A stretch of 64,000 bases of DNA, from contig NW_026782190.1 in NCBI RefSeq assembly GCF_031769215.1, forward strand, positions 1,736,001 to 1,800,000, in the 5' to 3' direction. Numbering within the stretch: position 1 is the stretch's first letter; each line of letters starts with the position of its first letter. The DNA comes from Ylistrum balloti. Its lineage: Eukaryota. The notes beneath the pieces are model-generated. The model saw only the letters and a program-made list of their open reading frames with translations, was not told where the DNA came from and searched no databases. Of the stretch, positions 12,191-27,404 are shown in pieces. Position numbers and translations under genes: made by a program.

Positions 12191-12217
12191 GAAGCTGAAC
12201 CTGCTTGATGCTCGATA
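12191..12217 (+). repeat. Left target-site duplication (27 bp)
   Basis: GAAGCTGAACCTGCTTGATGCTCGATA, identical to 14358-14384. Confidence 0.95.
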
Positions 12218-14357
12218 GTAGAGTGGTAGAGGCCATACATAAAAACAATTTACGTAAAGCGCCAGGAATTGATAGACTGACCAATGAACATTTCAAATAT
12301 GGAGGAAGATCCCTCATCACTTACCTCGTGGAATTCTTTCATCTCATAACGAGAAGTGCGGTAATTCCTGACGTCTGGAAAAAAGGTATCATTATACCTA
12401 TATATAAAGGGAATCACAAGCCTAGATCAGATCCGGAGAGTTATCGACCTATTTCGCTCCTACCTGCTATGTACAAACTGTATGAATCCGTTATCCATAA
12501 ACGACTTAAACTATGGCTAGGTGAAAACCACCCAACGTTCCCAAATGAACAGCAACAGGGATTTCAGCAACTACTTGGGTGTCAAACAGCTTCTTTTATA
12601 CTACAAGAAACACTTAACGCGAATATTGAAAAGCACAACAAAGTATACGCCGCTTTCCTTGATATAAAGAAAGCATTTGATACCGTATGGCACGAATGAT
12701 TAATGCAAAAACTTGAAATGAAAGGAATTCATGGGAAAATGCTTACCATTATCCGGAATACGTATACCGGCCTTGAAAGTTGTGTCCTTTGCAACGGGAT
12801 CCGCTCACGTTGGGTGGACATGAAACGTGGATTGAGACAGGGAGGGATATTATCCACATTGTACTACCTTATATTTATTGACGATCTCCTGAATAACCTC
12901 TCTGAATCGAAGTTCGGTGCCCCACTGTCAACGATAAACTGTGGAAACCCCGCGCTTGCCGATGATATTACACTGCTAGCCTTGTCACCACGTTCTCTTC
13001 AGCAGCTCCTTAATATTTGTCAAAATTACTCGACTCGGTGGAAATTTGCCTTTAATTCTAACGAATCTTGCACCATGGTGTTTGGTGGCAGATTTGATGT
13101 CAACAGCTTCAGTTGGAAACTAAACGGTTCAAAGTTGGATACTAAAGAAACTCAAGAACATCTTGGAATACCGATATCTGAGGACATGACATGTTCTAGA
13201 AAGATAGAAAAAAAGTTGTAAAAAAGGGCGTGCTGCATTGTTTTCTATTCTTGGTATAAGATCAACCAATAAAATCTTGAACCCGCTTACACTAGTCAGT
13301 ATGTACAAAAAAGTTATAATGCCGTCCATCCTTTACGGATGCGAAACATGGAATACGATGAGACAATGTGACATTGATAAACTCTCACGATATCAGCATC
13401 TTGTAGCAAAAAACTTCAAGATTTCCCCACACGTACACGCTCGGACATAGCAGAAAGTATGGTAGGTCTATTTCGGATTACCGCTGAGATAGATCGACGG
13501 AAACTCCAATTTCTTTACAGACTTATTAAACTTCCCATTGACATTCTTGCCAAGAAAGTGTTTTTAACTCGATTATACTCTTACCTTCACTCAGACACCA
13601 CTTGCCAAAAAGGATTTATACCGGACATCTACTCGATACTAAAAAAGTACAATCTCTTTGATCTACTCACAAAATATATGACTACCCGAATTCACTTTCC
13701 GTCCAAAAAAGCATGGGCATTGCTTGTTAACCGTGCCATTAAGACTGTGGAAACTAGAATGTGGCGGGAAAGAATGGAAAACGACGAGCGTTTTGACCGT
13801 TTCAGTGGGGTTCATACTCAGATATATCCTTATGTATTATGGTCTGCACCAGAGACAACAGCAGACCTTGCGTGCGTTCGTTTCGTATCAAAGCTTGTTA
13901 CATACGCTCCACAAAAGGAACAACACAACTGTAGTAAGTGTGGGAAATCAATGACTGATCTCATTCAGCACTACGTTTCTGATTGTGACGTCACATATGC
14001 TGTCAGAGACTCGTTTATGACAGAAATACTGAATGTATGTGGAATACAAACATTCCTTGCCCTGGACACTCAACAAGAAGAAGGATTTGTCCGAATGTTA
14101 TTTGGTCGTCACCACCCAGATGTGGAAGAAAACAGACAATATCACATGATGGCCGCTCGATTTCTGAGAGCAGCATCGCACACCTACCTGACAGCGCAAG
14201 ACAGAATATAAAGCGCGTATCCTAACGCGATCGCGTACGCGCTATCAAAATTACAAGAGACTGAGCCAAGTTTATGGCTTTAATTGTGTAATTATCTTTT
14301 TTGCATTTTCGCATTTTTTGTATCTCTAAAAGAGGAATTAAAGAATGAATGAAAATC
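12218..14357 (+). mobile_element. 5'-truncated non-LTR retrotransposon, RTE-X-like (RT plus C-terminal CCHC-type region)
   Basis: KAPGID, YRPISLL, FLDIKKAFDTVWH, RQGGILS, LADDITLL, CSKC..D.IQH.V..C. One nonsense codon (12697-12699) and frameshifts near 13210 and 13445. 3' end GGAATTAAAGAATGAATGAA. Flanked by a 27-bp TSD. Clade assignment is from motif recall. Confidence 0.92.
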
Positions 14358-15975: not shown

Positions 15976-18900
15976 CTATTCCGACTCCGGTAGGCGGTAT
16001 TGTCGGAATATGAGATTGTTGTACTCCAGCACCGACTTAACGGATTCAAAGTAAACAGAGGATCCAGCATACCAAATACCGTACTTCCCTTGCATGTCAA
16101 AGATATCCCAAGTTATTCCTGACGCTATGTCCTTAACAGAAAACTGTGGAAAGTAATCCCATACATTGGTATCCAGAATATTAACAACTTCTGCATTTTC
16201 CCTCTGACGAATATGGTCAACCAACTCCTCCAACAGATCTTCTTTCTCCGGCAATGATTTTGAGAATTGATAATATACGGATGTTTGCTCGAACCTTCCA
16301 TCAGGAGCCCCAGGAACCAATCCGTCGGTGTATTGTTTTCCCACGTTATATACTAGGCTGTTATAGGAGTCTCTTTTCCCCCACACCTTCCCGTCGACTT
16401 TGGATTCTGTATTATCAGCGAAGAAGCTTTGCGGTGTGAAACCTCTATTTGTCCCGTATGTGGTGTCTACTAGCGTTGTTGCGTAGTAATGATGGTTCAT
16501 TCTCTCGAAAAGATTCATCTCCTCGTCGTTGAAGTCGATGATATCTAAATCTGAAAGCAGTTTCATTTCCGGTGTCAATACAAGGAAGTCAAAAGGCTCT
16601 CCCTTTCTAAAGCCAGTCCGGTCATCATAGTGTATCTCGAACGCCGCACGACGCTTGCCACCCTTGCGGCGATTCTCTTTCTTCCGCCGATATATCTTTC
16701 TTACTGGAGATGAATATCGAACGTTGATATTTTCCTGGTCTACTATTTCCTTCCATAACGTTTGATAACCTTTACTTAGTATTTTGACAGCCGAGAGTTC
16801 ACCTTCTGGAGGTTTCAGGAGGTTTAGTAAAAAGTTCGAAGTCATCCATGTCAACCCATACAAAGCTGGAATTTCGTCTAAATGCCCATAGCCCTGAATT
16901 GTTTGTATCTGCAGAAAAAGGTTTGCGAGAATATCTACATTATGTTTTGTCATGAATTCTAATAATGTCATGTTAAGGTCATGCTTTAGAGTATATCTAG
17001 ACGGGCGTGGCATCAATTCCCCTTCGTAATTTCCAAACAGATCATTATGTACGTCCAAGTACCTATGTATAGCTTTCATGAACTCGTCTTTGATTTCCAA
17101 CAGGGAAGCATCGGGCAAGTGTTCAGCTGCAGGAGCAAGCATGTTCTGGATGGATGTCAGTTTATCTGTAATTATAAAGATATCATCATCGTCGGGAGAA
17201 TTTACGATAAAACAAGTGAGTGCATTTTGCCTGTAATTTTGGAAATGGAATGTCCCGCAAAATAATTTGTTTTAACAAAACCCAGTTGAGTGCAGAACAT
17301 TTGGATGTAGAAACCGTATACTGACCACAACAGATATGAAATTTGAATATAGACATTCCTATATACCCAGACGTTCCACAGTCTTAACAAAACCATATTA
17401 TTTCACCTACACATTGTTGGTCACGTGATGTTGTTATGGTAATCACTGGCTACCTATAACAAGTGTTACATTTACAACGCTCTTCTGTTATCAGCCAATC
17501 CACAGATAACATTAGAAATATATTTGTGATATGATAAATTAGTCCTTTCTTAACATTAGAAATGTATTCGTGATATAATAAAGTAGTCCTTTCTTAACAT
17601 TAGAAATATATTCATGATATGATAAATAAGTCCTTTCTGTTTCATTTATAATTACCTTGTCCTCTCCATACTGTAGGACTAGGTAAGGGACGAAGATCTC
17701 CGGCATTGTAAGTTTCAAGGAGTCTGTATAGTTCCGTGTAGTCTGGCTGGGAATAGCAGGTCCCCATTTCATGAACGACATCTCGGTACAAAAGTGTCTT
17801 CGATTTTCCGCCTACTTCTTCTTCCTTCTCAAACACAGTAACATCAGAGAATCCAGCTTCCTTAAAATGTTAACAAACCAAGGCATCATTTTACATTTAC
17901 ATCAAATCCTGAAAAGGTCAATAATGAATGAGAAGTTACTTCAACATCTGAAATTATTTTATACGTCAGATTATGTTCGGATGAATGTATTTGCAATAAC
18001 ACCTAACCACCGGGTTTATAAGTTGAAGTGATGTAAATTGCATTTTCCCCTAGCAGCGTTTAACTTTTACCAAACTTCAGCACTACTACAATAAAAGTAT
18101 ATTAATATCAGAGAACATACATTCACGTTTGGTTAATTCATTTCGACACGGAACGGTTTTTGCAGCAGCGCCTATGATTACTTGGTGAAAATCTTTAAAC
18201 GACAGTTCATGAAGTACTCGCTATATACAACACAATAAAATTTCACATGAAAATGTAATATACGTAAGAGTGTCTATTAAATCTTCGTTAAACATGGGCA
18301 ATTAAAGATTTAAAGATGGTAAAAATGAATTTCCTTGCTATTTTAGCACATAACATGAAGTAGAAATAGTTCCTTCATCAAAAAGTGCATTGTGACGTAT
18401 CAAGGGATGGTGTTGTTCCTACTAGCTAGTTCTGCTACTAGTTCAAAGGTTACTATTCAACTAGCTGTTGTCAAGAGGAAAGATTAATCCCAATGGAATA
18501 TATCTGAGTGTATATATAGCTAAAGAACCTTTCATTTTAGTTATTATTATTTTCAGTCATAAATGACTGATAAGATATTAGCAAAAAAATGATGTAAATA
18601 GAATTTTCGAAAATTTGTTTAATCTCTGACGTCAAAGTCTGTTCCCCATTATACACCATAAACTACAGGTAGTCACTAGAGACCTCACAGTCAAATAATA
18701 CAGGTGTACGTATTTTAAGTTTCAAGGTGTCTTGCTAACATCAGTAAATTATAAATAGTCCAAAACCTCATTGAAACGACCCATTTCTTGATCAATGTTG
18801 ACATGTGTATGTTTTGTACAATCTTTAAGTGGTAGACACAACCGGATCCCCGAGGTTTATCATAACAAGAATATAAGTACTTATACTGATAGGTTAAAGG

Positions 18901-21900
18901 CTTAAGATGTCATTTTGTGAACAGACTATATTTTGTGGTGAGTAGTTGATGTGTTGATTCAGGTAATAATTTTTACGATTTCAATACGCTTCAGTTGTCA
19001 AGTAATTTTCGTGAGTATAACTTTAACATGAATAATGTTAATCATGACACGGATGATAACATTTCTTCATTTTTAGAAAACACGATAAATATTCAGCTGA
19101 TCATTCATTTTACGCATTAAAGATATTCCCCAATATTTCTCTACCGAAGTTGAAAGGTTTTTTTTAAAAGGATCTGTTTCTTGATTTTAGTTTGTTTACC
19201 TGACATCTTTATTAAAAACACCTAAAATTGATATACTAGATCGTGATGAATGGGCTTATTCACACGCCTGATGGATGCGAAGTGGCCTTAAAGAAATGTT
19301 TGATCAGTCGATAGTTGAGTGCACATTATCCATTATGGTAGTTTAAAGATAAATAAATTGATGTGAAGTTAGCCTTCTACAATTCCCACCAGTACCCTTG
19401 TGGAACGGATTATGCGTCCATGATGTACCTTAAGTTTCAGTGCCATGTGCACACCAGACGGCCCCGCCCCAACAATGGCGATCCTGTCCGTGAAACTCTC
19501 TGGACCTTTAATATAAGGAAATCCTGATGTCGAACTCCCTAAATAATCCTCCTCCTCCTCCTCTGATGATGATGATGATGATGATGACAAAGAATCATTA
19601 TGATGGCTTCTTTTTTCCAATATTTGATCCAGTTCGCCTGTCAATATATGTATATACTAGAATTATGACACCATTAAAACACACAATAGTTAACTAACTA
19701 CAGACACCTAATCACACAACTAATGACAACATGTTATCTCATAATAGTTCACTAATTATTGTCAGCATGTTTACATACAATAAATTACTAACCTCTGACA
19801 CCATTACAACACTAAACAGTTCACTAACTAAAGACACCTCCTCACACATTAGTTACTTTAACTTCTAACACCATTACACCGAACAACATTTAACTAACTT
19901 CTGACACCATCAAACCACACAACAGTTAACTAACTACTGACACCATGTTATCACACAACAGTTAATTAACTTGTGACACCATTACAATACACAAAAATTC
20001 ACGAACTACAGACACCATATTATCACACAACATTTAATTAACCTGTGACACCATTACAATACACAAAAGTTCACTAACTACACACACCATGTTATCACAC
20101 AACAATTAATTAATTTGTGACACCATTACAATACACAAAAGTTCACTAACTACAGACACCATGTTATCACACAACAGTTAATTAACTTGTGACACCATTA
20201 CAATACACAAAAGTTCACTAACTACAGACACCATGTTATCACACAACAGTTAACTAGTAACACCATTACAATACACAAAAGTTCACTAACTACAGACAAC
20301 ATGTAATCACACAACTGTTAATTAACTTGTGACACCATAACAATACACAAAAGTTCACTAACTACAGACAACATGATATCACACAACAGTTAATTAACTT
20401 GTGACACCATTACAATACACAAAAGTTAACTAACTACAGACACCATGTTATCACACAACAGTTAACTCACACAACAGTTAATTAAACACCATTACAATAC
20501 ACAAAAGTTCACTAACTACAGATATCACACAACATGTAATCACACAACTGTTAATTAACTTGTGACACCATAACAATACACAAAAGTTCACTAACTACAC
20601 AAAACAGACAACATGATATCACACAACAGTTAATTAACTTGTGACACCATTACAATACACAAAAGTTAACTAACTACAGACACCATGTTATCACACAACA
20701 GTTAACTTGTAACGCCATTACAATACACAAAAGTTCACTAACTACAGACAACATGTAATCACACAACAGTTAATTAACTTGTGACACCATTACAATACAC
20801 AAAAGTTCACTAACTACAGACAACATGATATCACACAACTGTTAATTAACTTGTGACACCATTACAATACACAAAAGTTCACTAACTACAGACACCATGT
20901 TATCACACAACAGTTAATTAACTTGTGACACCATTACAATACACAAATGTTCACTAACTACAGACACCATGTTATCACACAACAGTTAATTGACTTGTGA
21001 CACCATTACAATACACAAAAGTTCAGTAACTACAGACACCATGTTATCACACAACAGTTAATTAACTTGTGACACCATTACAATACAGAATAGTAATTAC
21101 TTATATCTTGTTAACGTTCAAACGCATTGGTTTACTAACGTCTGGTGCTGTTTCATCACCAGAAATTACGAAAAATAATTATAAACTTACGTTCCAATAT
21201 TTCCAGGAAGTCTTCGTTTAAAACCGGCAGCATGCTTACAACCTAAACAAAAAAAGAGGGTTGTACTATACAATCATATCCTATCTAAAATACTACTGGT
21301 CATAAAGAAACTACGTGACCAAATTTGGTCTGAAGCATCTTTGTGGAAGAAAGGGAAATGAAGTAAGTTCTTTCAAATTCTTCTTCTGTAGGAATGATTA
21401 ACTTTGTCCGAAATTGGTCTGAAGGATTCATGCGTGATAGGGGCCCCCGTAGGACCAGAAGATCGGAGAACGATAGAGTTACTTTCAACTGTTGAGTGAG
21501 GTGTCCGAGCGGGGAATGAGAGTGTACTCACTTTAAAATCCTGCTGAGTGGGGAGTCCGCTCGGGGAACGATAGGGTTACTTTAAACTGTTGAGTGAGGT
21601 GTCCTTAAACTGTTGAGTGAGGTGTCCGAGTGGGGAACGATAGGGTAATTACTTTAAACTCCAGCTGGGTGGGAGGTCCGAGCGGGGAATGATAGAGTAA
21701 TCACTTTAAACTGTTGAGTGAGGTGTCCGAGCGGGGAATGAGAATCCTGCTGGGTGGGATGTCCGCTCGGGGGACGATAGTGTAATCACTTTTAACTGTT
21801 GGGTCGGGTATCCGAGCGGGGAACGATAGGTTAATCACATTAAAATCCCGCTGGGTGGGGTTCACGAGCGGGGAACGATAGTGCAAAAACTTTAAACTCC

Positions 21901-22880
21901 TGCTGGGTGGGGTGTTAGATTGAGTTACTAGTACTTCAAATTACTTCAGCATTATGCCCTATAAATCTTTTAACTAAAGTAATGATAAAGAGTTTTAGCG
22001 CTCAATGATGATATTTTTTTGCTTGAAAACGCTATAATGCACTTTAAAGTCTCCTATATTGCTTGTTTTATGACAACATAGAGAATATTGAATGATCGCC
22101 CGTTTGATATCATATTTTTCACAAGTGAAGTATTTGATTTTAAGGAAAATCGTCTTTTTACATTTTGAAGGGAAAACAATTGAGAAAAGCCGATTCAAAC
22201 AAAATTCTGCTTTTTTTTAAAAGTCCAGTAATTATTATCGCGCTCTCTGATGGCAGATAATTTGACGTTACGCTTGACAACAAGACATCGCCATTTTGAG
22301 TAAGCTGCTTTACGTTTTACTTTACCATTTTTCGCTGTTATCTGAATCGCTTAAAAAACTATTTTATATACCAAATGAGAGAATAACAGAAATATACAAC
22401 GTAAATGTTGGATATGCATTGGTGTCATTACAGGAAAATCGGCAGGCGAATTTCAATGCAGTGATTAGAAAGCATTGCTCTGGTTGTCAAAACAACAAAA
22501 CTTATATTATCATTTGAAAAGTTAATATAATGATATTATATTTATCATATCATCACTGCAGTGATGCTGTAAGTGTTTAGCAAGTTGATCAATAGAGATT
22601 ATGTAATGGTTTCCAGTTTAATATAATTAATATTCAACGAGTATGAAGGAATATCTATTTCTCGAAAGTATTAAGAACGAATGAATATATTCATATTCAG
22701 TAGTGATGCTATAAGTTTGTATCTCATTTGTAAATTTCTATATTTCAAAAGCAGAATATAATAAACGATACATTTATTATACAATAAAGCTAATGATGCG
22801 TGAATGAATGGAATACTTTGTTTACCTACCTGAAAACACCCTATCAGAATAGAAAGTAGCACTACCGCAGTACGCTTCAT
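15976..22880 (-). CDS. Secreted FAD-dependent oxidoreductase, polyunsaturated/polyenoic fatty-acid isomerase (PAI/PFI)-like, 552 aa; exons 22880-22826, 19637-19429, 17860-17656, 17165-15976
   Basis: All introns GT-AG with matching phases (1,0,1); 1659 nt open. Signal peptide MKRTAVVLLSILIGCFQVG; Rossmann motif RIAIVGAGPSG; EAGFSDVTVFEKEEEVGGKS; HEMG; QGYGHLDEIPALY; WDYFPQFS; MQGKYGIWYAG. Confidence 0.9.
17509..17640. repeat. 44-bp triplication next to the exon 3 donor
   Basis: ACATTAGAAA.. at 17509, 17553 and 17597. Confidence 0.9.
19660..21090. repeat. 72-bp dimeric (2 x 36 bp) minisatellite in intron 1, with degenerate monomeric left edge
   Basis: GACACCATTACAATACACAAAAGTTCACTAACTACA + GACACCATGTTATCACACAACAGTTAATTAACTTGT; period 72 (20119 to 20191). 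Confidence 0.95.
21470..21915. repeat. GC-rich ~49-52-bp minisatellite, copy A
   Basis: ACTTTAAACTGTT..GTCCGAGCGGGGAACGATAG.. units. Confidence 0.9.
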
Positions 22881-22997
22881 GCTGCTTATTCAATATACGT
22901 GTGTATTACATGGAGCGCGCCACAGCTCAATTCAGGTGAGAAATGCGATCAATTTGGCCTTAATACCTTATCTTTCCGATGTAATATACAAAATGTG

Positions 22998-23035
22998 ATT
23001 GGCTGACAGTTTCTATAATTTCTATGGTGATGTAA
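22998..23035 (-). promoter_or_regulatory. Proximal promoter elements of exon 1A: CCAAT box (22998-23002) and TGATGTAA
   Basis: Motif match ~120-150 nt upstream of the ATG; positionally conserved in copy B. Confidence 0.35.
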
Positions 23036-24394
23036 TATTCACCGCAGGTTCACTGTATTAAAAATTTATGAGAGAAAATATCGCCCATCTAGATTTCATA
23101 TCAGTCTGATAACGCGCTTCTTACAAGTGTTTTCAAAACCGGATCTAAGTCTGGTGATAAACACAATCATATTTACGTTTTCATTACATGTAAAGTACAT
23201 GAAACCAAACCTCGCATTATCCACAGCAACATAATATATACTAACGAGGAATGACAATTTATGTAGAGAAATATCTGCCATTGATTATACTGATGTGAAT
23301 GTATATACCAAAATATATTCACAAAAGTTTCCATGTCAATCTGGAGATACAAGCATGCATGAATATATCATCTTCATAGTCGAAATATCTGACTGTATTA
23401 CACTGCATATAGAGATAATTATATAAGGTAAAGTGATGAACGAATGGTTCATCAATTAACAGGAAATTTAGATATGAATATATGTACCCTTAGATGTATA
23501 ATTGTTACTGAATTGCAGATAGAGAAAATCTATTTTCAAATGTTGATTTAAGATTGTTATATATGTGAGTTTATTTATAAGTAAATACCAAATTTAATGC
23601 TGGAAACTCTACATCTTAATATAAAGAACACGAAATCTAGTCTTTTCAGATCAATTTTCTAAAAGATATTAATGTAGATATGTGTAGATGGAAACCAGTA
23701 TACGCTTCGTAACTGGGCTCATTTCATTGTGTTCTTATGCATATATTTATCAAATGTGGAGATAAATACTTTTTTCATATCTACACTAACACACAATATG
23801 TTTGAGTAATATTTCGGAACATTCTCTTCAGGTTGGTAATGTCAATAAAATAGAAGTTCTTTCTGCACAACCAGTATCAGATTAAAGTGTAATGTTTTGA
23901 TGACTTCACGGCCACCTTCATGACCAAATGACCAGTGTGGAACGTACTAGCAATAACGTAAGAAGTGCACGAGATTGCCAGGAATCGACCAATATTTTCA
24001 ATTGCACTATAAACCCATGTAAATAGGTCGAAAAAATTGTGGTCTATGATCTGTATACCATCTCGTCACACTGTTTGCGACTTTAGTGTACATATGGTTG
24101 TGCCATACGAACTTATATTCTATATGTTTGTGGAATGACAGGACAAAGCAGATATTAGCGTTTGCATACAAGAACAAAACATCATGGGCATTAGTAAACA
24201 ACAGTGTTAATAATACGTGAAATTACAAATACAACCATGTTTAAAAAACTCTGACAAAATCCAAAGGTTACAACACTACACTTTGCCATTGGCATAGCAT
24301 GAAACACACGATACAATGTCAGGACACTGAGCGAAAAATCCAACACAGGATATTCAAACACATTGGGGTAAAAACAAGACGTCTGCAAACCAGG

Positions 24395-25375: not shown

Positions 25376-26292
25376 TTGAGTCACTAGTACTTTAAATTAC
25401 TTCAGCATTATGCACTATAAATCTTTTAACTAAAGTAATGGTAAAGATTTTTTAGGGCTTAATGATGATATTTTTTGTTTGAAAAAGTTATAATGCGCTT
25501 TAAAGTCTCATATATTGCTTGTTTGATGACAGCATATATAATATTGAATGATCACCCGTTTAATATCATATTTTTTACGAGTAAAGTATTTTGTTTTAAG
25601 GAAAACCATCTTTTTTACATTTTGAAGGAAAACCAATTGAGAAAAGCCGATTCATACATAGAATTCTGCTTTTCATAAGAGTCCAGTAATTATTATCGCG
25701 CTCTCTGATGGCAGATAATTTGACGTTACGCTTGACAACAAGACATCGCCATTTTGAGTAAGCTGCTTTACGTTTAACTTTACCATTTTTCGCTGTTATC
25801 TGAGTCAGTTACAAAACTATATTATATACCAAATGAGAGAAAAACAGAAATATACAACGTAAATATTGGATATGCATTGGTGTCGGGACAGGAAAATCGG
25901 CAGGCGAATTTCAATGCAGTGATTAGAAAGCATCGCTCTGGTTGTCAAAACAACAAAAGTTATATAATCACTTGAAAAGTTAATGTGATGATATTCTATT
26001 TATCATATCGTCACTGCAATGATGCTGTAAGTGTTTAGCAAGTTGATCAATAGATAATATTTAATGGTTTCCTGTTTAATATAATTAATATTCAACGAGT
26101 ATGAAAGAATATCTATTTCTCAAAAATATTAAGAACGAGTATATTTATATTCAGTAGTGATGCTATAAGTTTGCATCTCATTTGTAAATTCCTACATTTC
26201 AAAAGCAGAAATGTAATAAACGATGCATTTATCATACAATAAAGCTAATAATGCGTTAATGAATGGCATACTGAGAGAAGAACTGTGTTAAC

Positions 26293-26347
26293 CTACCTGA
26301 AAACACCCTATCAGAATAGAAAGTAGCACTACCGCAGTACGCTTCAT
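26293..26347 (-). CDS. Duplicate (alternative) first coding exon of the PAI/PFI-like gene
   Basis: 55 nt identical to 22826-22880 (MKRTAVVLLSILIGCFQV-G); phase-1 donor G|GTTAAC. Confidence 0.7.
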
Positions 26348-26464
26348 GCTGCTTATTCAGTTTTCGTGTGTATTACATGGAGCGCGCCACAGCTCAACTC
26401 AGGTGAGAAATGCGATCAATTTGGCCTTAATACCTTATCTTTCCGATGTAATATACAAATTGTG

Positions 26465-26502
26465 ATTGGCTGACAGTTTCTATAATTTCTATAGTGACGT
26501 AA
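26465..26502 (-). promoter_or_regulatory. Proximal promoter elements of exon 1B: CCAAT box (26465-26469) and CRE/PAR-like TGACGTAA (26495-26502)
   Basis: Motif match only. Confidence 0.35.
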
Positions 26503-27404
26503 TATTCACCGCAGCTTCAGCAGATAGAGAAAAACTATTTTTAAATGTTGATTTATGATTGTTATATATGTGAGTTTATTTATAAGTAAATATCAAATTT
26601 AATGCTGGAAACTCTACATATTAATATGAAGAACACGAATTCTAGTCTTTTCAGATGAATTTTCTAAAAGATATTAATGTAGATATGTGTAAATGATAAC
26701 CAGTATACGCTTCGTAACTGGGCTCATTTCATTGTGTTCTTATGCATATATTTATCAAATGTGGAGATAAATACTTTTTTCATATCTACACTAACACACA
26801 ATATGTTTGAGTAATATTTCGGAACATTCTCTTCAGGTTGGTAATGTCAATAAAATAGAAGTTCTTTCTGCACAACCAGTATCAGATTAAAGTGTAATAT
26901 TTTGATGACTTCACGGCCACCTTCATGACCAAATGACCAGTGTGGAACGTACTAGCACTGACGTACGAAGTGCACGAGATGGTCAGGAATCGACTAATGT
27001 TTACAATTGCACTATAAACCTATGTCAACTAAGGTCGAAAATATTGTGGTCTATAATCTGTATACCATCTCGTCACACTGTTTTCGACTTCAGTATACAT
27101 ATGGTTGTGTAATATGAAATTATATTCTATGTGTTTGTGGAATAACAGGACAGAGCAGATATTAGCGTTTGCATACAAGAACAAAACATCATGGACATTA
27201 GTAAACAGCATTGTTAATTACACGTGAAATTACAAATACAACCATGTTTAAAAAACTCTGACAAAATCCAAAGGTAACAACACTACACTTTGCAATTGGC
27301 ATGAAACGCATGATACAATATCAGCACACTGACGGGAAAATCCAACACAGGGTATACAATCATACTGGGGGGAAAAGACGTCTGCAAACCTGGCCAAATC
27401 GCAA

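What the first reader, a model, noticed from the sequence alone, without database searches (positions are those of the whole stretch)
15976..22880. Animal gene for a secreted polyunsaturated fatty-acid isomerase (PAI/PFI)-like flavoenzyme
Seen: an intact spliced gene. From recall of the Cutibacterium acnes linoleate isomerase PAI, similarity runs the whole length: RIAI(V/I)GAGP, xAGFxDxTxxE..VGGK, (H/Y)EMG, GYGH.D..PA.Y, D.LVLT, W.YFP..S..D...G, MQG....YAG. The red-algal PFI is a related secreted enzyme. Such conjugated-fatty-acid-forming isomerases are known from bacteria and algae, not as characterised animal enzymes, so this is a candidate for unusual lipid chemistry and possibly an old horizontal transfer (72% of the CDS is in one exon). 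The activity may differ from PAI.
Basis: partly seen in the sequence, partly recalled or inferred. Interest (0 to 1): 0.8.

Follow-up and report, generated by a model that had tools for sequence, protein, structure and literature searches.

The report
Scallop PAI/PFI-like secreted flavoenzyme gene
This is a real, intact five-exon scallop gene for a probably secreted FAD enzyme whose closest solved relative is the bacterial linoleate isomerase PAI; it belongs to an uncharacterised family shared by bivalves, cnidarians and a copepod, and is not a scallop-specific gene transfer.

Summary
Window 15976-22880 (minus strand) carries an intact GT-AG spliced gene, LOC132552013 of the scallop Ylistrum balloti, encoding 568 aa.

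PAI (2b9w) is by far the best solved match:
- By sequence, profile E 3.6e-38, against 2e-11 for the next hit, which matches only the Rossmann part.
- By fold, Z 35.8, rmsd 2.4 A, 418 of 423 residues aligned.

The protein has an N-terminal signal-like segment and is under purifying selection (dN/dS 0.36 against its tandem paralog).

The transfer idea is not supported:
- The scallop genome has at least six paralog loci, and four of them share intron positions with this gene.
- Bivalve sequences are monophyletic inside a strongly supported clade.
- Every named member of that clade is an animal (octocoral, anemone, hydrozoan, oysters, copepod).
- Named chytrid and dinoflagellate relatives fall outside that clade, and bacteria lie further out.

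NCBI already labels scallop and anemone orthologs "polyenoic fatty acid isomerase(-like)", but I found no paper on an animal member. The likely function is FAD-dependent PUFA double-bond isomerisation; this is inferred, not shown. No RNA data were available. I rate it a new member of a known kind, of moderate interest.

The parts
22830..22880 (-). Coding exon 1 (51 nt): ATG and the signal-peptide-like segment MKRTAVVLLSILIGCFQ. Donor GTAGGT, phase 0.
   Evidence: It holds the only strongly hydrophobic 19-aa stretch of the protein.
21191..21242 (-). It encodes VVSMLPVLNEDFLEILE plus one base, part of an acidic helical segment after the signal peptide.
   Evidence: Acceptor TTTAG, donor GTAAGT. 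The homologous segment is present in P0002 and P0003.
19429..19637 (-). Coding exon 3 (209 nt): dibasic EKR, the Ser/Glu-rich low-complexity linker (residues 50-65) and the start of the FAD Rossmann fold, with RIAIVGAGPSG at residues 86-96 (GxGxxG at 19453-19470).
   Evidence: The AlphaFold model is disordered over residues 46-70 and confident from about residue 78.
17656..17860 (-). Coding exon 4 (205 nt): EAGFSDVTVFEKEEEVGGK...HEMG, the second half of the FAD-binding motif.
   Evidence: Pfam Amino_oxidase and NAD_binding_8 hits; alignment with PAI residues 4-76.
15976..17165 (-). Coding exon 5 (1190 nt including the stop, 69.7% of the CDS): substrate and cap domains and the C-terminal FAD-binding part. 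It contains QGYGH (16882-16896), the basic loop RRKKENRRKGGKRR (16648-16689), WDYFPQFS (16138-16161) and MQG...WYAGSSVYFES.
25457..26519 (-). A roughly 1.06-kb duplicate (91% identity) of the exon 1 and promoter segment 22000-23053. It includes an identical 55-nt stretch from the ATG through the donor site (26293-26347). It could be an alternative first exon or a remnant of duplication; its use is unknown.

Best explanation
The locus is a functional Ylistrum balloti gene (LOC132552013) for a secreted FAD-binding enzyme of about 63 kDa. It belongs to the PAI/PFI branch of the amine-oxidase fold. After the signal peptide come a short acidic helix and a Ser/Glu-rich linker; the catalytic fold runs from about residue 78 to 567.

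The most likely mechanism follows PAI. A free polyunsaturated fatty acid enters a hydrophobic channel that reaches the flavin. The oxidised FAD then shifts a double bond without net redox change, giving a conjugated diene or triene. The abundant C20-C22 marine PUFAs (ARA, EPA, DHA) are the likely substrates.

The gene is one member of a family expanded in scallops (at least six loci, including a tandem paralog about 26 kb away). It was inherited within a secreted-enzyme clade shared by bivalves, cnidarians and a copepod, not recently transferred from bacteria or algae.

Shown: gene structure, family and fold assignment, FAD motifs, signal-like N-terminus, purifying selection and phylogenetic position. 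Inferred: secretion, FAD occupancy, isomerase chemistry and substrate.
For: - Gene: the five GT-AG exons translate exactly to P0001.
- Constraint: dN/dS is 0.36 against the tandem paralog. Both coding SNPs seen in DNA run X1 (possibly the assembly's own sample) are synonymous.
- Family by sequence: the large exon alone hits only PAI 2b9w in the PDB (E 2.4e-9). The family profile A1 hits PAI at E 3.6e-38 in three stretches spanning the N-terminal, middle and C-terminal parts (PAI 4-76, 119-299, 343-422). The next best hit (putrescine oxidase) is 2e-11 and covers only the Rossmann part.
- Family by fold: the AlphaFold model has pLDDT 81 and pTM 0.81. PAI ranks first by Foldseek (E 1.8e-27, TM 0.85 by target; next about 5e-19). 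PAI ranks first by VIA-align (Z 35.8, rmsd 2.4 A, 418 of 423 residues; next is CpaO at Z 28.8, others at 26 or less).
- Pfam Amino_oxidase is above its gathering score.
- FAD motifs and the family motifs (GYGH, W-YFP, MQG..YAG) are invariant across 17 animal-clade proteins.
- Animal-clade proteins carry hydrophobic N-termini, whereas chytrid and dinoflagellate relatives start directly at the Rossmann fold.
- At least six paralog loci exist; four of them share exon boundaries near residues 104/105 and 173/174.
- Careful IQ-TREE: the animal-named clade has 100/99 support, Mollusca are monophyletic at 97/91, and bacteria are separated at 99/97.
- The unnamed nearest clade is octocoral-like: P0228 of Dendronephthya is 72% identical to P0021.
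- The PAI mechanism (FAD-assisted, no net redox change) is as summarised in PMC13076199. PFI activity on ARA and EPA is as described in PMC7700177.
Against: - No activity, cofactor or expression data exist for any animal member. The only public run holding the locus is genomic DNA.
- Identity to PAI is only 20-22%. Close fold relatives such as CpaO and LkcE carry out quite different chemistry, so fold and motifs do not fix the reaction.
- PAI Phe168, in its TAFGYGH motif, corresponds to an invariant Gln (Q263) in the animal clade.
- The stretch of PAI that holds Arg88 did not align, so conservation of the substrate channel is unproven.
- The Ptilota PFI sequence could not be retrieved for a direct comparison.
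- 26 of the 46 rows in the 'animal' clade were unnamed when the tree was built. A later search shows that the eight-row subclade nearest the scallops is octocoral-like.
Confidence: 0.6

Rival explanations
1. The fold and family are the same, but the chemistry differs. On this reading the protein is a secreted flavin oxidase or dehydrogenase, or a cyclase. It would act on some other lipid, polyene, amine or amino acid, for example producing H2O2 for defence as molluscan L-amino-acid oxidases do. The PAI resemblance would then reflect ancestry, not function.
For: - Pfam classes it simply as Amino_oxidase.
- The next structural neighbours are oxidases and cyclases: CpaO at Z 28.8, then PPO, MAO, LAAO and LkcE at Z 23-26.
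- PAI Phe168 is replaced by an invariant Gln in the animal clade.
- Identity to PAI is only about 22%.
Against: - PAI stands about 7 Z units and 27 orders of magnitude in profile E-value above every oxidase.
- Oxidase hits by sequence cover only the Rossmann part.
- NCBI's automatic naming of orthologs points to the algal isomerase PFI as their best characterised match.
Confidence: 0.27
2. The gene family reached animals by horizontal transfer from a bacterium or alga. This could have been into the scallop lineage or, much earlier, into an ancestor of several marine invertebrate phyla.
For: - Distribution among named animals is patchy: bivalves, cnidarians and one copepod, with no vertebrate or insect names among the hits.
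- Octocoral-like genomic copies are intronless single ORFs.
- Most of the scallop CDS lies in one exon.
- The characterised relatives are bacterial and algal.
Against: - A recent transfer into scallops is contradicted by four spliceosomal introns, which four paralog loci share in position.
- Bivalve sequences are monophyletic (97/91) inside an animal-named clade with 100/99 support.
- Bacterial homologs are only 22-24% identical and lie outermost.
- The named rows between them and the animal clade are eukaryotes: chytrids and a dinoflagellate.
- Patchiness can equally be explained by loss.
Confidence: 0.1
3. The locus is a decaying or unexpressed duplicate, and its tandem paralog LOC132552011 is the working copy.
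For: - No RNA evidence could be obtained.
- The duplication is recent and tandem (dS 0.39).
- A duplicated exon 1 and promoter segment lies upstream.
Against: - The ORF is open over 568 codons with all splice sites canonical.
- dN/dS is 0.36, and both coding polymorphisms are synonymous.
- All family-invariant residues are retained.
Confidence: 0.03

Closest known systems
PAI, polyunsaturated fatty acid (linoleate) isomerase of Cutibacterium (Propionibacterium) acnes, PDB 2b9w
   Same: It has the same three-domain amine-oxidase-type FAD fold, aligned over 418 of 423 residues (Z 35.8, rmsd 2.4 A). It is the best and only whole-length PDB sequence match. The two share GxGxxG, E..VGGK, EMG, GYGH.D..PA.Y, D.LVLT, W.YFP and MQG....YAG.
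   Different: Identity is only 20-22%. PAI is a cytosolic bacterial protein of 424 aa. The scallop protein has a signal-like N-terminus, an acidic helix plus Ser/Glu linker of about 75 aa, and a basic surface loop (residues 332-345). PAI Phe168 corresponds to an invariant Gln. The region holding PAI Arg88 did not align. Activity is untested.
[quoted passage not shown]
   Same: It is a eukaryotic marine enzyme that converts ARA and EPA to conjugated trienes. NCBI names scallop and sea-anemone orthologs of this gene 'polyenoic fatty acid isomerase(-like)'. That implies PFI is their best characterised sequence match. From memory, unchecked here, PFI is also made with a signal peptide and is a glycosylated flavoprotein.
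   Different: None of the three word searches returned the PFI sequence, and it was not identified among the hits of the exhaustive search. Identity, tree position and residue conservation relative to PFI are therefore untested here.
CpaO (PDB 9kp8) and LkcE (6f7l): amine-oxidase-fold enzymes with oxidative cyclase chemistry
   Same: They are the next-closest folds (CpaO Z 28.8, LkcE Z 23.5). They show that this fold branch hosts unusual non-amine chemistry on hydrophobic substrates.
   Different: They match much less well than PAI. By sequence, no non-PAI PDB hit extends beyond the Rossmann part; CpaO and LkcE are not among the 60 sequence hits shown. Both are bacterial or fungal secondary-metabolite enzymes.
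Molluscan secreted L-amino-acid oxidases (achacin / aplysianin / escapin type) and snake-venom LAAO
   Same: They are secreted FAD enzymes of the same superfamily in molluscs, and could provide an alternative, defensive role.
   Different: LAAO structures match only through the N-terminal dinucleotide-binding part by sequence (E about 1e-9, against 3.6e-38 for PAI). They have lower fold scores (Z about 22-26).

Membership tests
PAI/PFI-type FAD-dependent PUFA double-bond isomerases | Three-domain amine-oxidase-type fold with PAI as the nearest structure | tested here: met
   Foldseek ranks 2b9w first (E 1.8e-27, TM 0.85 by target). VIA-align gives Z 35.8, rmsd 2.4 A, 418 of 423 residues, about 7 Z units above the next entry. 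The model has pLDDT 81.
PAI/PFI-type FAD-dependent PUFA double-bond isomerases | Sequence homology to PAI across the N-terminal, middle and C-terminal parts, beyond the generic Rossmann motif | tested here: met
   Profile A1 against the PDB gives 2b9w at E 3.6e-38, in three stretches covering PAI 4-76, 119-299 and 343-422. All other hits are at 2e-11 or worse and cover the Rossmann part only. Exon 5 alone, which lacks the Rossmann part, hits PAI at 2.4e-9.
PAI/PFI-type FAD-dependent PUFA double-bond isomerases | FAD-binding motifs (GxGxxG, acidic end of beta-2, GGK, C-terminal YAG(E/S) segment) | tested here: met
   G91, G93, G96, E115, G121, G122, K123 and G540-S542 are invariant in 17 animal-clade sequences and align to the PAI equivalents.
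PAI/PFI-type FAD-dependent PUFA double-bond isomerases | PAI substrate-channel residues. The list is recalled from Liavonchanka et al. 2006 (Arg88 and Phe193 at the entrance, Phe168 near the flavin); the paper is not held in the library. | tested here: inconclusive
   PAI F168 (in TAFGYGH) aligns with the invariant Q263 (in TIQGYGH), so it is not conserved. PAI 77-118, which holds R88, was not aligned by HMMER. The F193 region aligns only loosely. Model coordinates could not be superposed residue by residue with the tools available.
PAI/PFI-type FAD-dependent PUFA double-bond isomerases | Direct sequence relationship to the characterised algal PFI | not tested
   The PFI sequence was not returned, nor identified among the representatives. 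The only support is indirect: NCBI names for orthologs in Mizuhopecten, Pecten and Actinia.
PAI/PFI-type FAD-dependent PUFA double-bond isomerases | Redox-neutral isomerisation of methylene-interrupted PUFA to conjugated polyenes | not testable with these tools
   This needs recombinant enzyme and UV, GC-MS or NMR assays.
Secreted (PFI-like) form | N-terminal signal peptide and no other membrane segment | tested here: met
   The only 19-aa windows with Kyte-Doolittle hydropathy above 1.5 lie within residues 1-27. Scallop, coral-like, anemone and copepod members have similar N-termini, whereas chytrid and dinoflagellate relatives lack them. No dedicated signal-peptide predictor was available.
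Classical flavin amine oxidases (MAO / PAO / LAAO; Pfam PF01593) | Match to the Pfam Amino_oxidase model and to oxidase structures over the substrate domain | tested here: inconclusive
   PF01593 is above its gathering score (44.5 bits against 19.8), but only over residues 95-377. PDB oxidases align by sequence only over the first roughly 80 residues of the fold. So it is a superfamily member, with no sign of belonging to an amine-oxidase subfamily.

The most novel reading that the evidence does not exclude
Bivalves, cnidarians and copepods share a clade of secreted PAI/PFI-type flavoenzymes, expanded to at least six loci in scallops. These would isomerise dietary or endogenous C20-C22 PUFAs extracellularly into conjugated trienes or tetraenes. 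That would make them the first animal 'conjugases' of this type, and a source of unrecognised lipid mediators or antimicrobial or antifeedant lipids in marine invertebrates.
Probability: 0.4. Interest if true: 0.6.

Novelty: new member of a known kind. Interest (0 to 1): 0.4.

Why it matters
Enzymatic formation of conjugated polyenoic fatty acids by this flavoenzyme type has been demonstrated for a bacterium (PAI) and a red alga (PFI). I found no animal member studied in the literature library. This gene shows that scallops carry an intact, constrained and expanded set of PAI-like genes with secretion signals. Related genes occur in corals, anemones, hydrozoans, oysters and a copepod.

If these enzymes are isomerases, marine invertebrates would have their own route to conjugated PUFAs. 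That would bear on lipid signalling, defence and seafood lipid chemistry, and the enzymes could serve as eukaryotic biocatalysts for C20-C22 substrates.

The claim is limited. Automated annotation already labels the orthologs PFI-like, the transfer angle is not supported, and the function is inferred from homology only.

Tried and rejected
1. Expression. The single public run holding the locus (X1) covers the introns continuously, so it is genomic DNA. I obtained no RNA evidence. It may also be the sample the assembly came from.
2. It stays in frame with an alternative donor at 22826. I rejected it because the NCBI protein and the paralogs and orthologs contain the exon-2 peptide.
3. The Ptilota PFI sequence. 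It was not returned by three word searches (the last using a 94-sequence C-terminal-only alignment). It was not identifiable among the 150 representatives listed by the exhaustive search. Direct comparison was therefore left out.
4. Naming of representatives. 30 look-ups gave only 7 organism names. Most relatives are unnamed metagenome or transcriptome proteins, so taxonomic statements rest on few labels.
5. The PAI structure paper (PMC1413795) is not held in the library. The PAI channel residues are therefore from memory and marked as such.
6. Fusarium FgLAI12 (PMC5384231). The paper gives no fold or homology information, so I could not confirm it as a family member and do not use it as a relative.
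7. Bacterial relatives from 185,579 species genomes. The best is 24% identical (Hyphomonas MAG), and most hits cover only the Rossmann motif. I found no close bacterial donor.
8. Earlier scan notes on this genome hold nothing on this family.
9. I did not attempt a complex prediction, because the report makes no binding claim.
Full report
**What is there.**
The minus strand between 22880 and 15976 carries one intact protein-coding gene. ORF listing and direct reading of the sequence gave the large terminal exon and three upstream coding pieces. A first four-exon assembly was in frame. However, the database protein that matches the large exon at 100% has 16 extra residues after the signal peptide. 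That protein is P0001, 'uncharacterized protein LOC132552013 [Ylistrum balloti]', 568 aa. The extra residues are encoded by a 52-nt exon at 21242-21191 with good splice sites.

The final model has five coding exons:
- 22880-22830
- 21242-21191
- 19637-19429
- 17860-17656
- 17165-15976

The introns are 1587, 1553, 1568 and 490 nt, all GT-AG. The 1707-nt CDS translates exactly into P0001. The last exon holds 69.7% of the CDS. The window contains no N. It is G000:C333:1736001-1800000 of a 648-Mb assembly. NCBI places the protein on a 2.1-Mb contig. Contamination is therefore not an issue.

**Is it alive?**
The ORF is open and every residue that is invariant across 17 family members is retained. 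Against its tandem paralog, which lies about 26 kb away and outside the window (LOC132552011, P0002), exon 5 gives dN 0.141, dS 0.391 and dN/dS 0.36. The contigs of run X1 span the introns, so X1 is DNA, not RNA. In the stretch laid (17000-22950, exons 1-4 and the first 166 nt of exon 5), its only two coding differences are K116 AAG>AAA and V19 GTA>GTG. Both are synonymous. X1 may be the sample the assembly came from. No RNA run was available, so transcription is not shown here.

**What family?**
- Pfam sees only the generic Amino_oxidase (PF01593, above its gathering score) and NAD_binding_8. NCBIfam has nothing above its cut-offs.
- Against all PDB sequences, the large exon, which lacks the Rossmann motif, hits one entry only. 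That entry is 2b9w, the C. acnes CLA-forming isomerase PAI, at E 2.4e-9.
- A profile of 17 family members hits PAI at E 3.6e-38. The match runs in three stretches covering PAI 4-76, 119-299 and 343-422.
- The next hits (putrescine oxidase, PPO, LAAO, MAO) are at 2e-11 or worse and cover only the dinucleotide-binding part.
- The AlphaFold model built with that alignment has pLDDT 81 and pTM 0.81. It is disordered over residues 1-29 and 46-70.
- Foldseek ranks 2b9w first for this model (E 1.8e-27, TM 0.85 by target).
- VIA-align also ranks it first: Z 35.8, rmsd 2.4 A, 418 of 423 residues, 22% identity. CpaO follows at Z 28.8 and all others at 26 or less.

One difference stands out. PAI's TAF168GYGH reads TIQ263GYGH here, and that Gln is invariant in the animal clade. 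The part of PAI that holds Arg88 did not align. Conservation of the substrate channel is therefore open.

**Protein anatomy.**
The only strongly hydrophobic stretch lies within residues 1-27, as expected for a signal peptide. After it come:
- an acidic helical segment (exon 2 and the start of exon 3) ending in a dibasic EKR;
- a Ser8-Glu5 low-complexity linker;
- the catalytic fold, from about residue 78.

There are two N-glycosylation sequons (N48, N237) and two cysteines, one of them in the signal peptide. The mature protein is about 63 kDa with pI about 5.0. A strongly basic, poorly modelled loop (RRKKENRRKGGKRR, residues 332-345) occurs only in this scallop subclade. Signal-like N-termini occur in scallop, coral-like, anemone and copepod members. 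The chytrid and dinoflagellate relatives begin at the Rossmann strand.

**Relatives and the transfer question.**
*Relatives found.*
- The word searches found orthologs and paralogs in Mizuhopecten, Pecten, Argopecten and Ylistrum. Several are named by NCBI 'polyenoic fatty acid isomerase(-like)'.
- They also found relatives in Actinia tenebrosa (same name), Oithona nana, Saccostrea and Dendronephthya gigantea, plus many unnamed metagenome and transcriptome proteins.
- The Ylistrum genome has matches at six or more loci: C333 twice, C47 twice, C559 and C62, plus a distant one on C233.
- Four of the paralog loci (the C333 tandem copy, both C47 copies and C62) share exon boundaries with this gene near residues 104/105 and 173/174. 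Those introns therefore predate the duplications.
- The exhaustive profile search found 624 cluster representatives at E below 1e-30.

*Where the gene sits in the trees.*
- In a FastTree of 145 rows, the scallop proteins fall in a well-supported clade. In a careful IQ-TREE of 68 rows under LG+C20+F+G4, that clade has 100/99 support.
- The named members of that clade are all animals: Pectinidae, Saccostrea, Actinia, Hydractinia and Oithona.
- Mollusca are monophyletic at 97/91.
- The unnamed clade that is 38-41% identical to the scallop protein is octocoral-like: Dendronephthya P0228 is 72% identical to P0021 and 63% to P0029.
- The named rows outside the animal clade are chytrid fungi (Terramyces, Rhizoclosmatium) and a dinoflagellate (Polarella).
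- Bacterial homologs from a scan of species genomes are at most 24% identical and lie outermost.
- Contigs carrying the octocoral-like proteins (P0019, P0021) and a sister-group protein (P0064) are gene-poor and eukaryote-like. The gene on them is an intronless ORF.

*What this means.* The picture is an old eukaryotic family with a secreted animal branch that is patchily retained. It does not look like a transfer into scallops. An ancient transfer into early animals cannot be excluded with so few labelled rows, but nothing positively supports it.

**Function.**
The characterised relatives I know of are PAI and the algal PFI. In PAI, FAD assists a redox-neutral shift of a double bond of linoleate, stabilising a cationic intermediate (summarised in PMC13076199). 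PFI converts arachidonate and EPA to conjugated trienes (PMC7700177). I found no paper on an animal member.

By homology, the best reading is a secreted FAD-dependent PUFA isomerase, and I give the whole reading about 0.6. The main rival, at about 0.27, is a different flavin chemistry on another hydrophobic substrate. Three facts keep it alive: the neighbouring folds CpaO and LkcE are oxidative cyclases, identity to PAI is low, and Phe168 is replaced.

**Verdict.**
The family assignment is supported and the transfer idea is not. Because orthologs already carry the PFI-like label in public annotation, this is a new, uncharacterised member of a known kind. It is moderately interesting, mainly as a testable lead to conjugated-lipid chemistry in marine invertebrates.

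Noticed in passing
window 25457-26519 (compare 22000-23053): A segment of about 1.06 kb holding exon 1 and the upstream region of the gene is duplicated 3.5 kb further upstream at 91% identity. The 55 nt from the ATG through the splice donor are identical (26293-26347). It could be an alternative promoter and first exon encoding the same signal peptide, or a relic of the tandem gene duplication.
   Followed up: partly
window 12205-13221 (+): Two adjacent ORFs (164 and 172 aa) match the two halves of Pfam RVT_1 (E 1e-12 and 1e-9). This is a broken reverse transcriptase of a retroelement about 3 kb beyond the 3' end of the gene.
   Followed up: partly
window 16648-16689 (-), residues 332-345: A highly basic surface loop, RRKKENRRKGGKRR, is modelled with low confidence. 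It is present only in the scallop subclade containing this gene (P0001-P0005) and absent from the other scallop paralogs and from cnidarian members. It might be a polyanion- or membrane-binding patch, or a convertase site.
   Followed up: no
window 19546-19593 (-), residues 50-65; also residues 43-45: A Ser8-Glu5-Asp low-complexity linker is preceded by a dibasic EKR. The serine run is much longer in the Mizuhopecten ortholog P0003. It resembles S-x-E secretory-kinase phosphorylation tracts or a cleavable pro-region. The read-laying tool skipped this stretch as repetitive.
   Followed up: no
G000:C333:1725071-1732452 (outside the window, about 26 kb beyond the gene's 3' end): The tandem paralog LOC132552011 (P0002, 74-78% identical) lies here, with dS 0.39 and dN/dS 0.36 against the window gene. 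In the tree, the two Ylistrum copies group together and the Mizuhopecten ortholog is their sister, so the duplication followed that split.
   Followed up: partly
L002:8001-12447 and L001:8001-9617: Octocoral-like metagenome contigs carry the homolog as an intronless ORF. L002 has a second copy just downstream, split into two ORFs, and a reverse-transcriptase fragment upstream. So tandem duplication of this family also occurs outside molluscs.
   Followed up: no
G000:C233:1249590-1250708: A distant (22% identity) single-exon relative of the family sits elsewhere in the scallop genome. I did not examine it.
   Followed up: no
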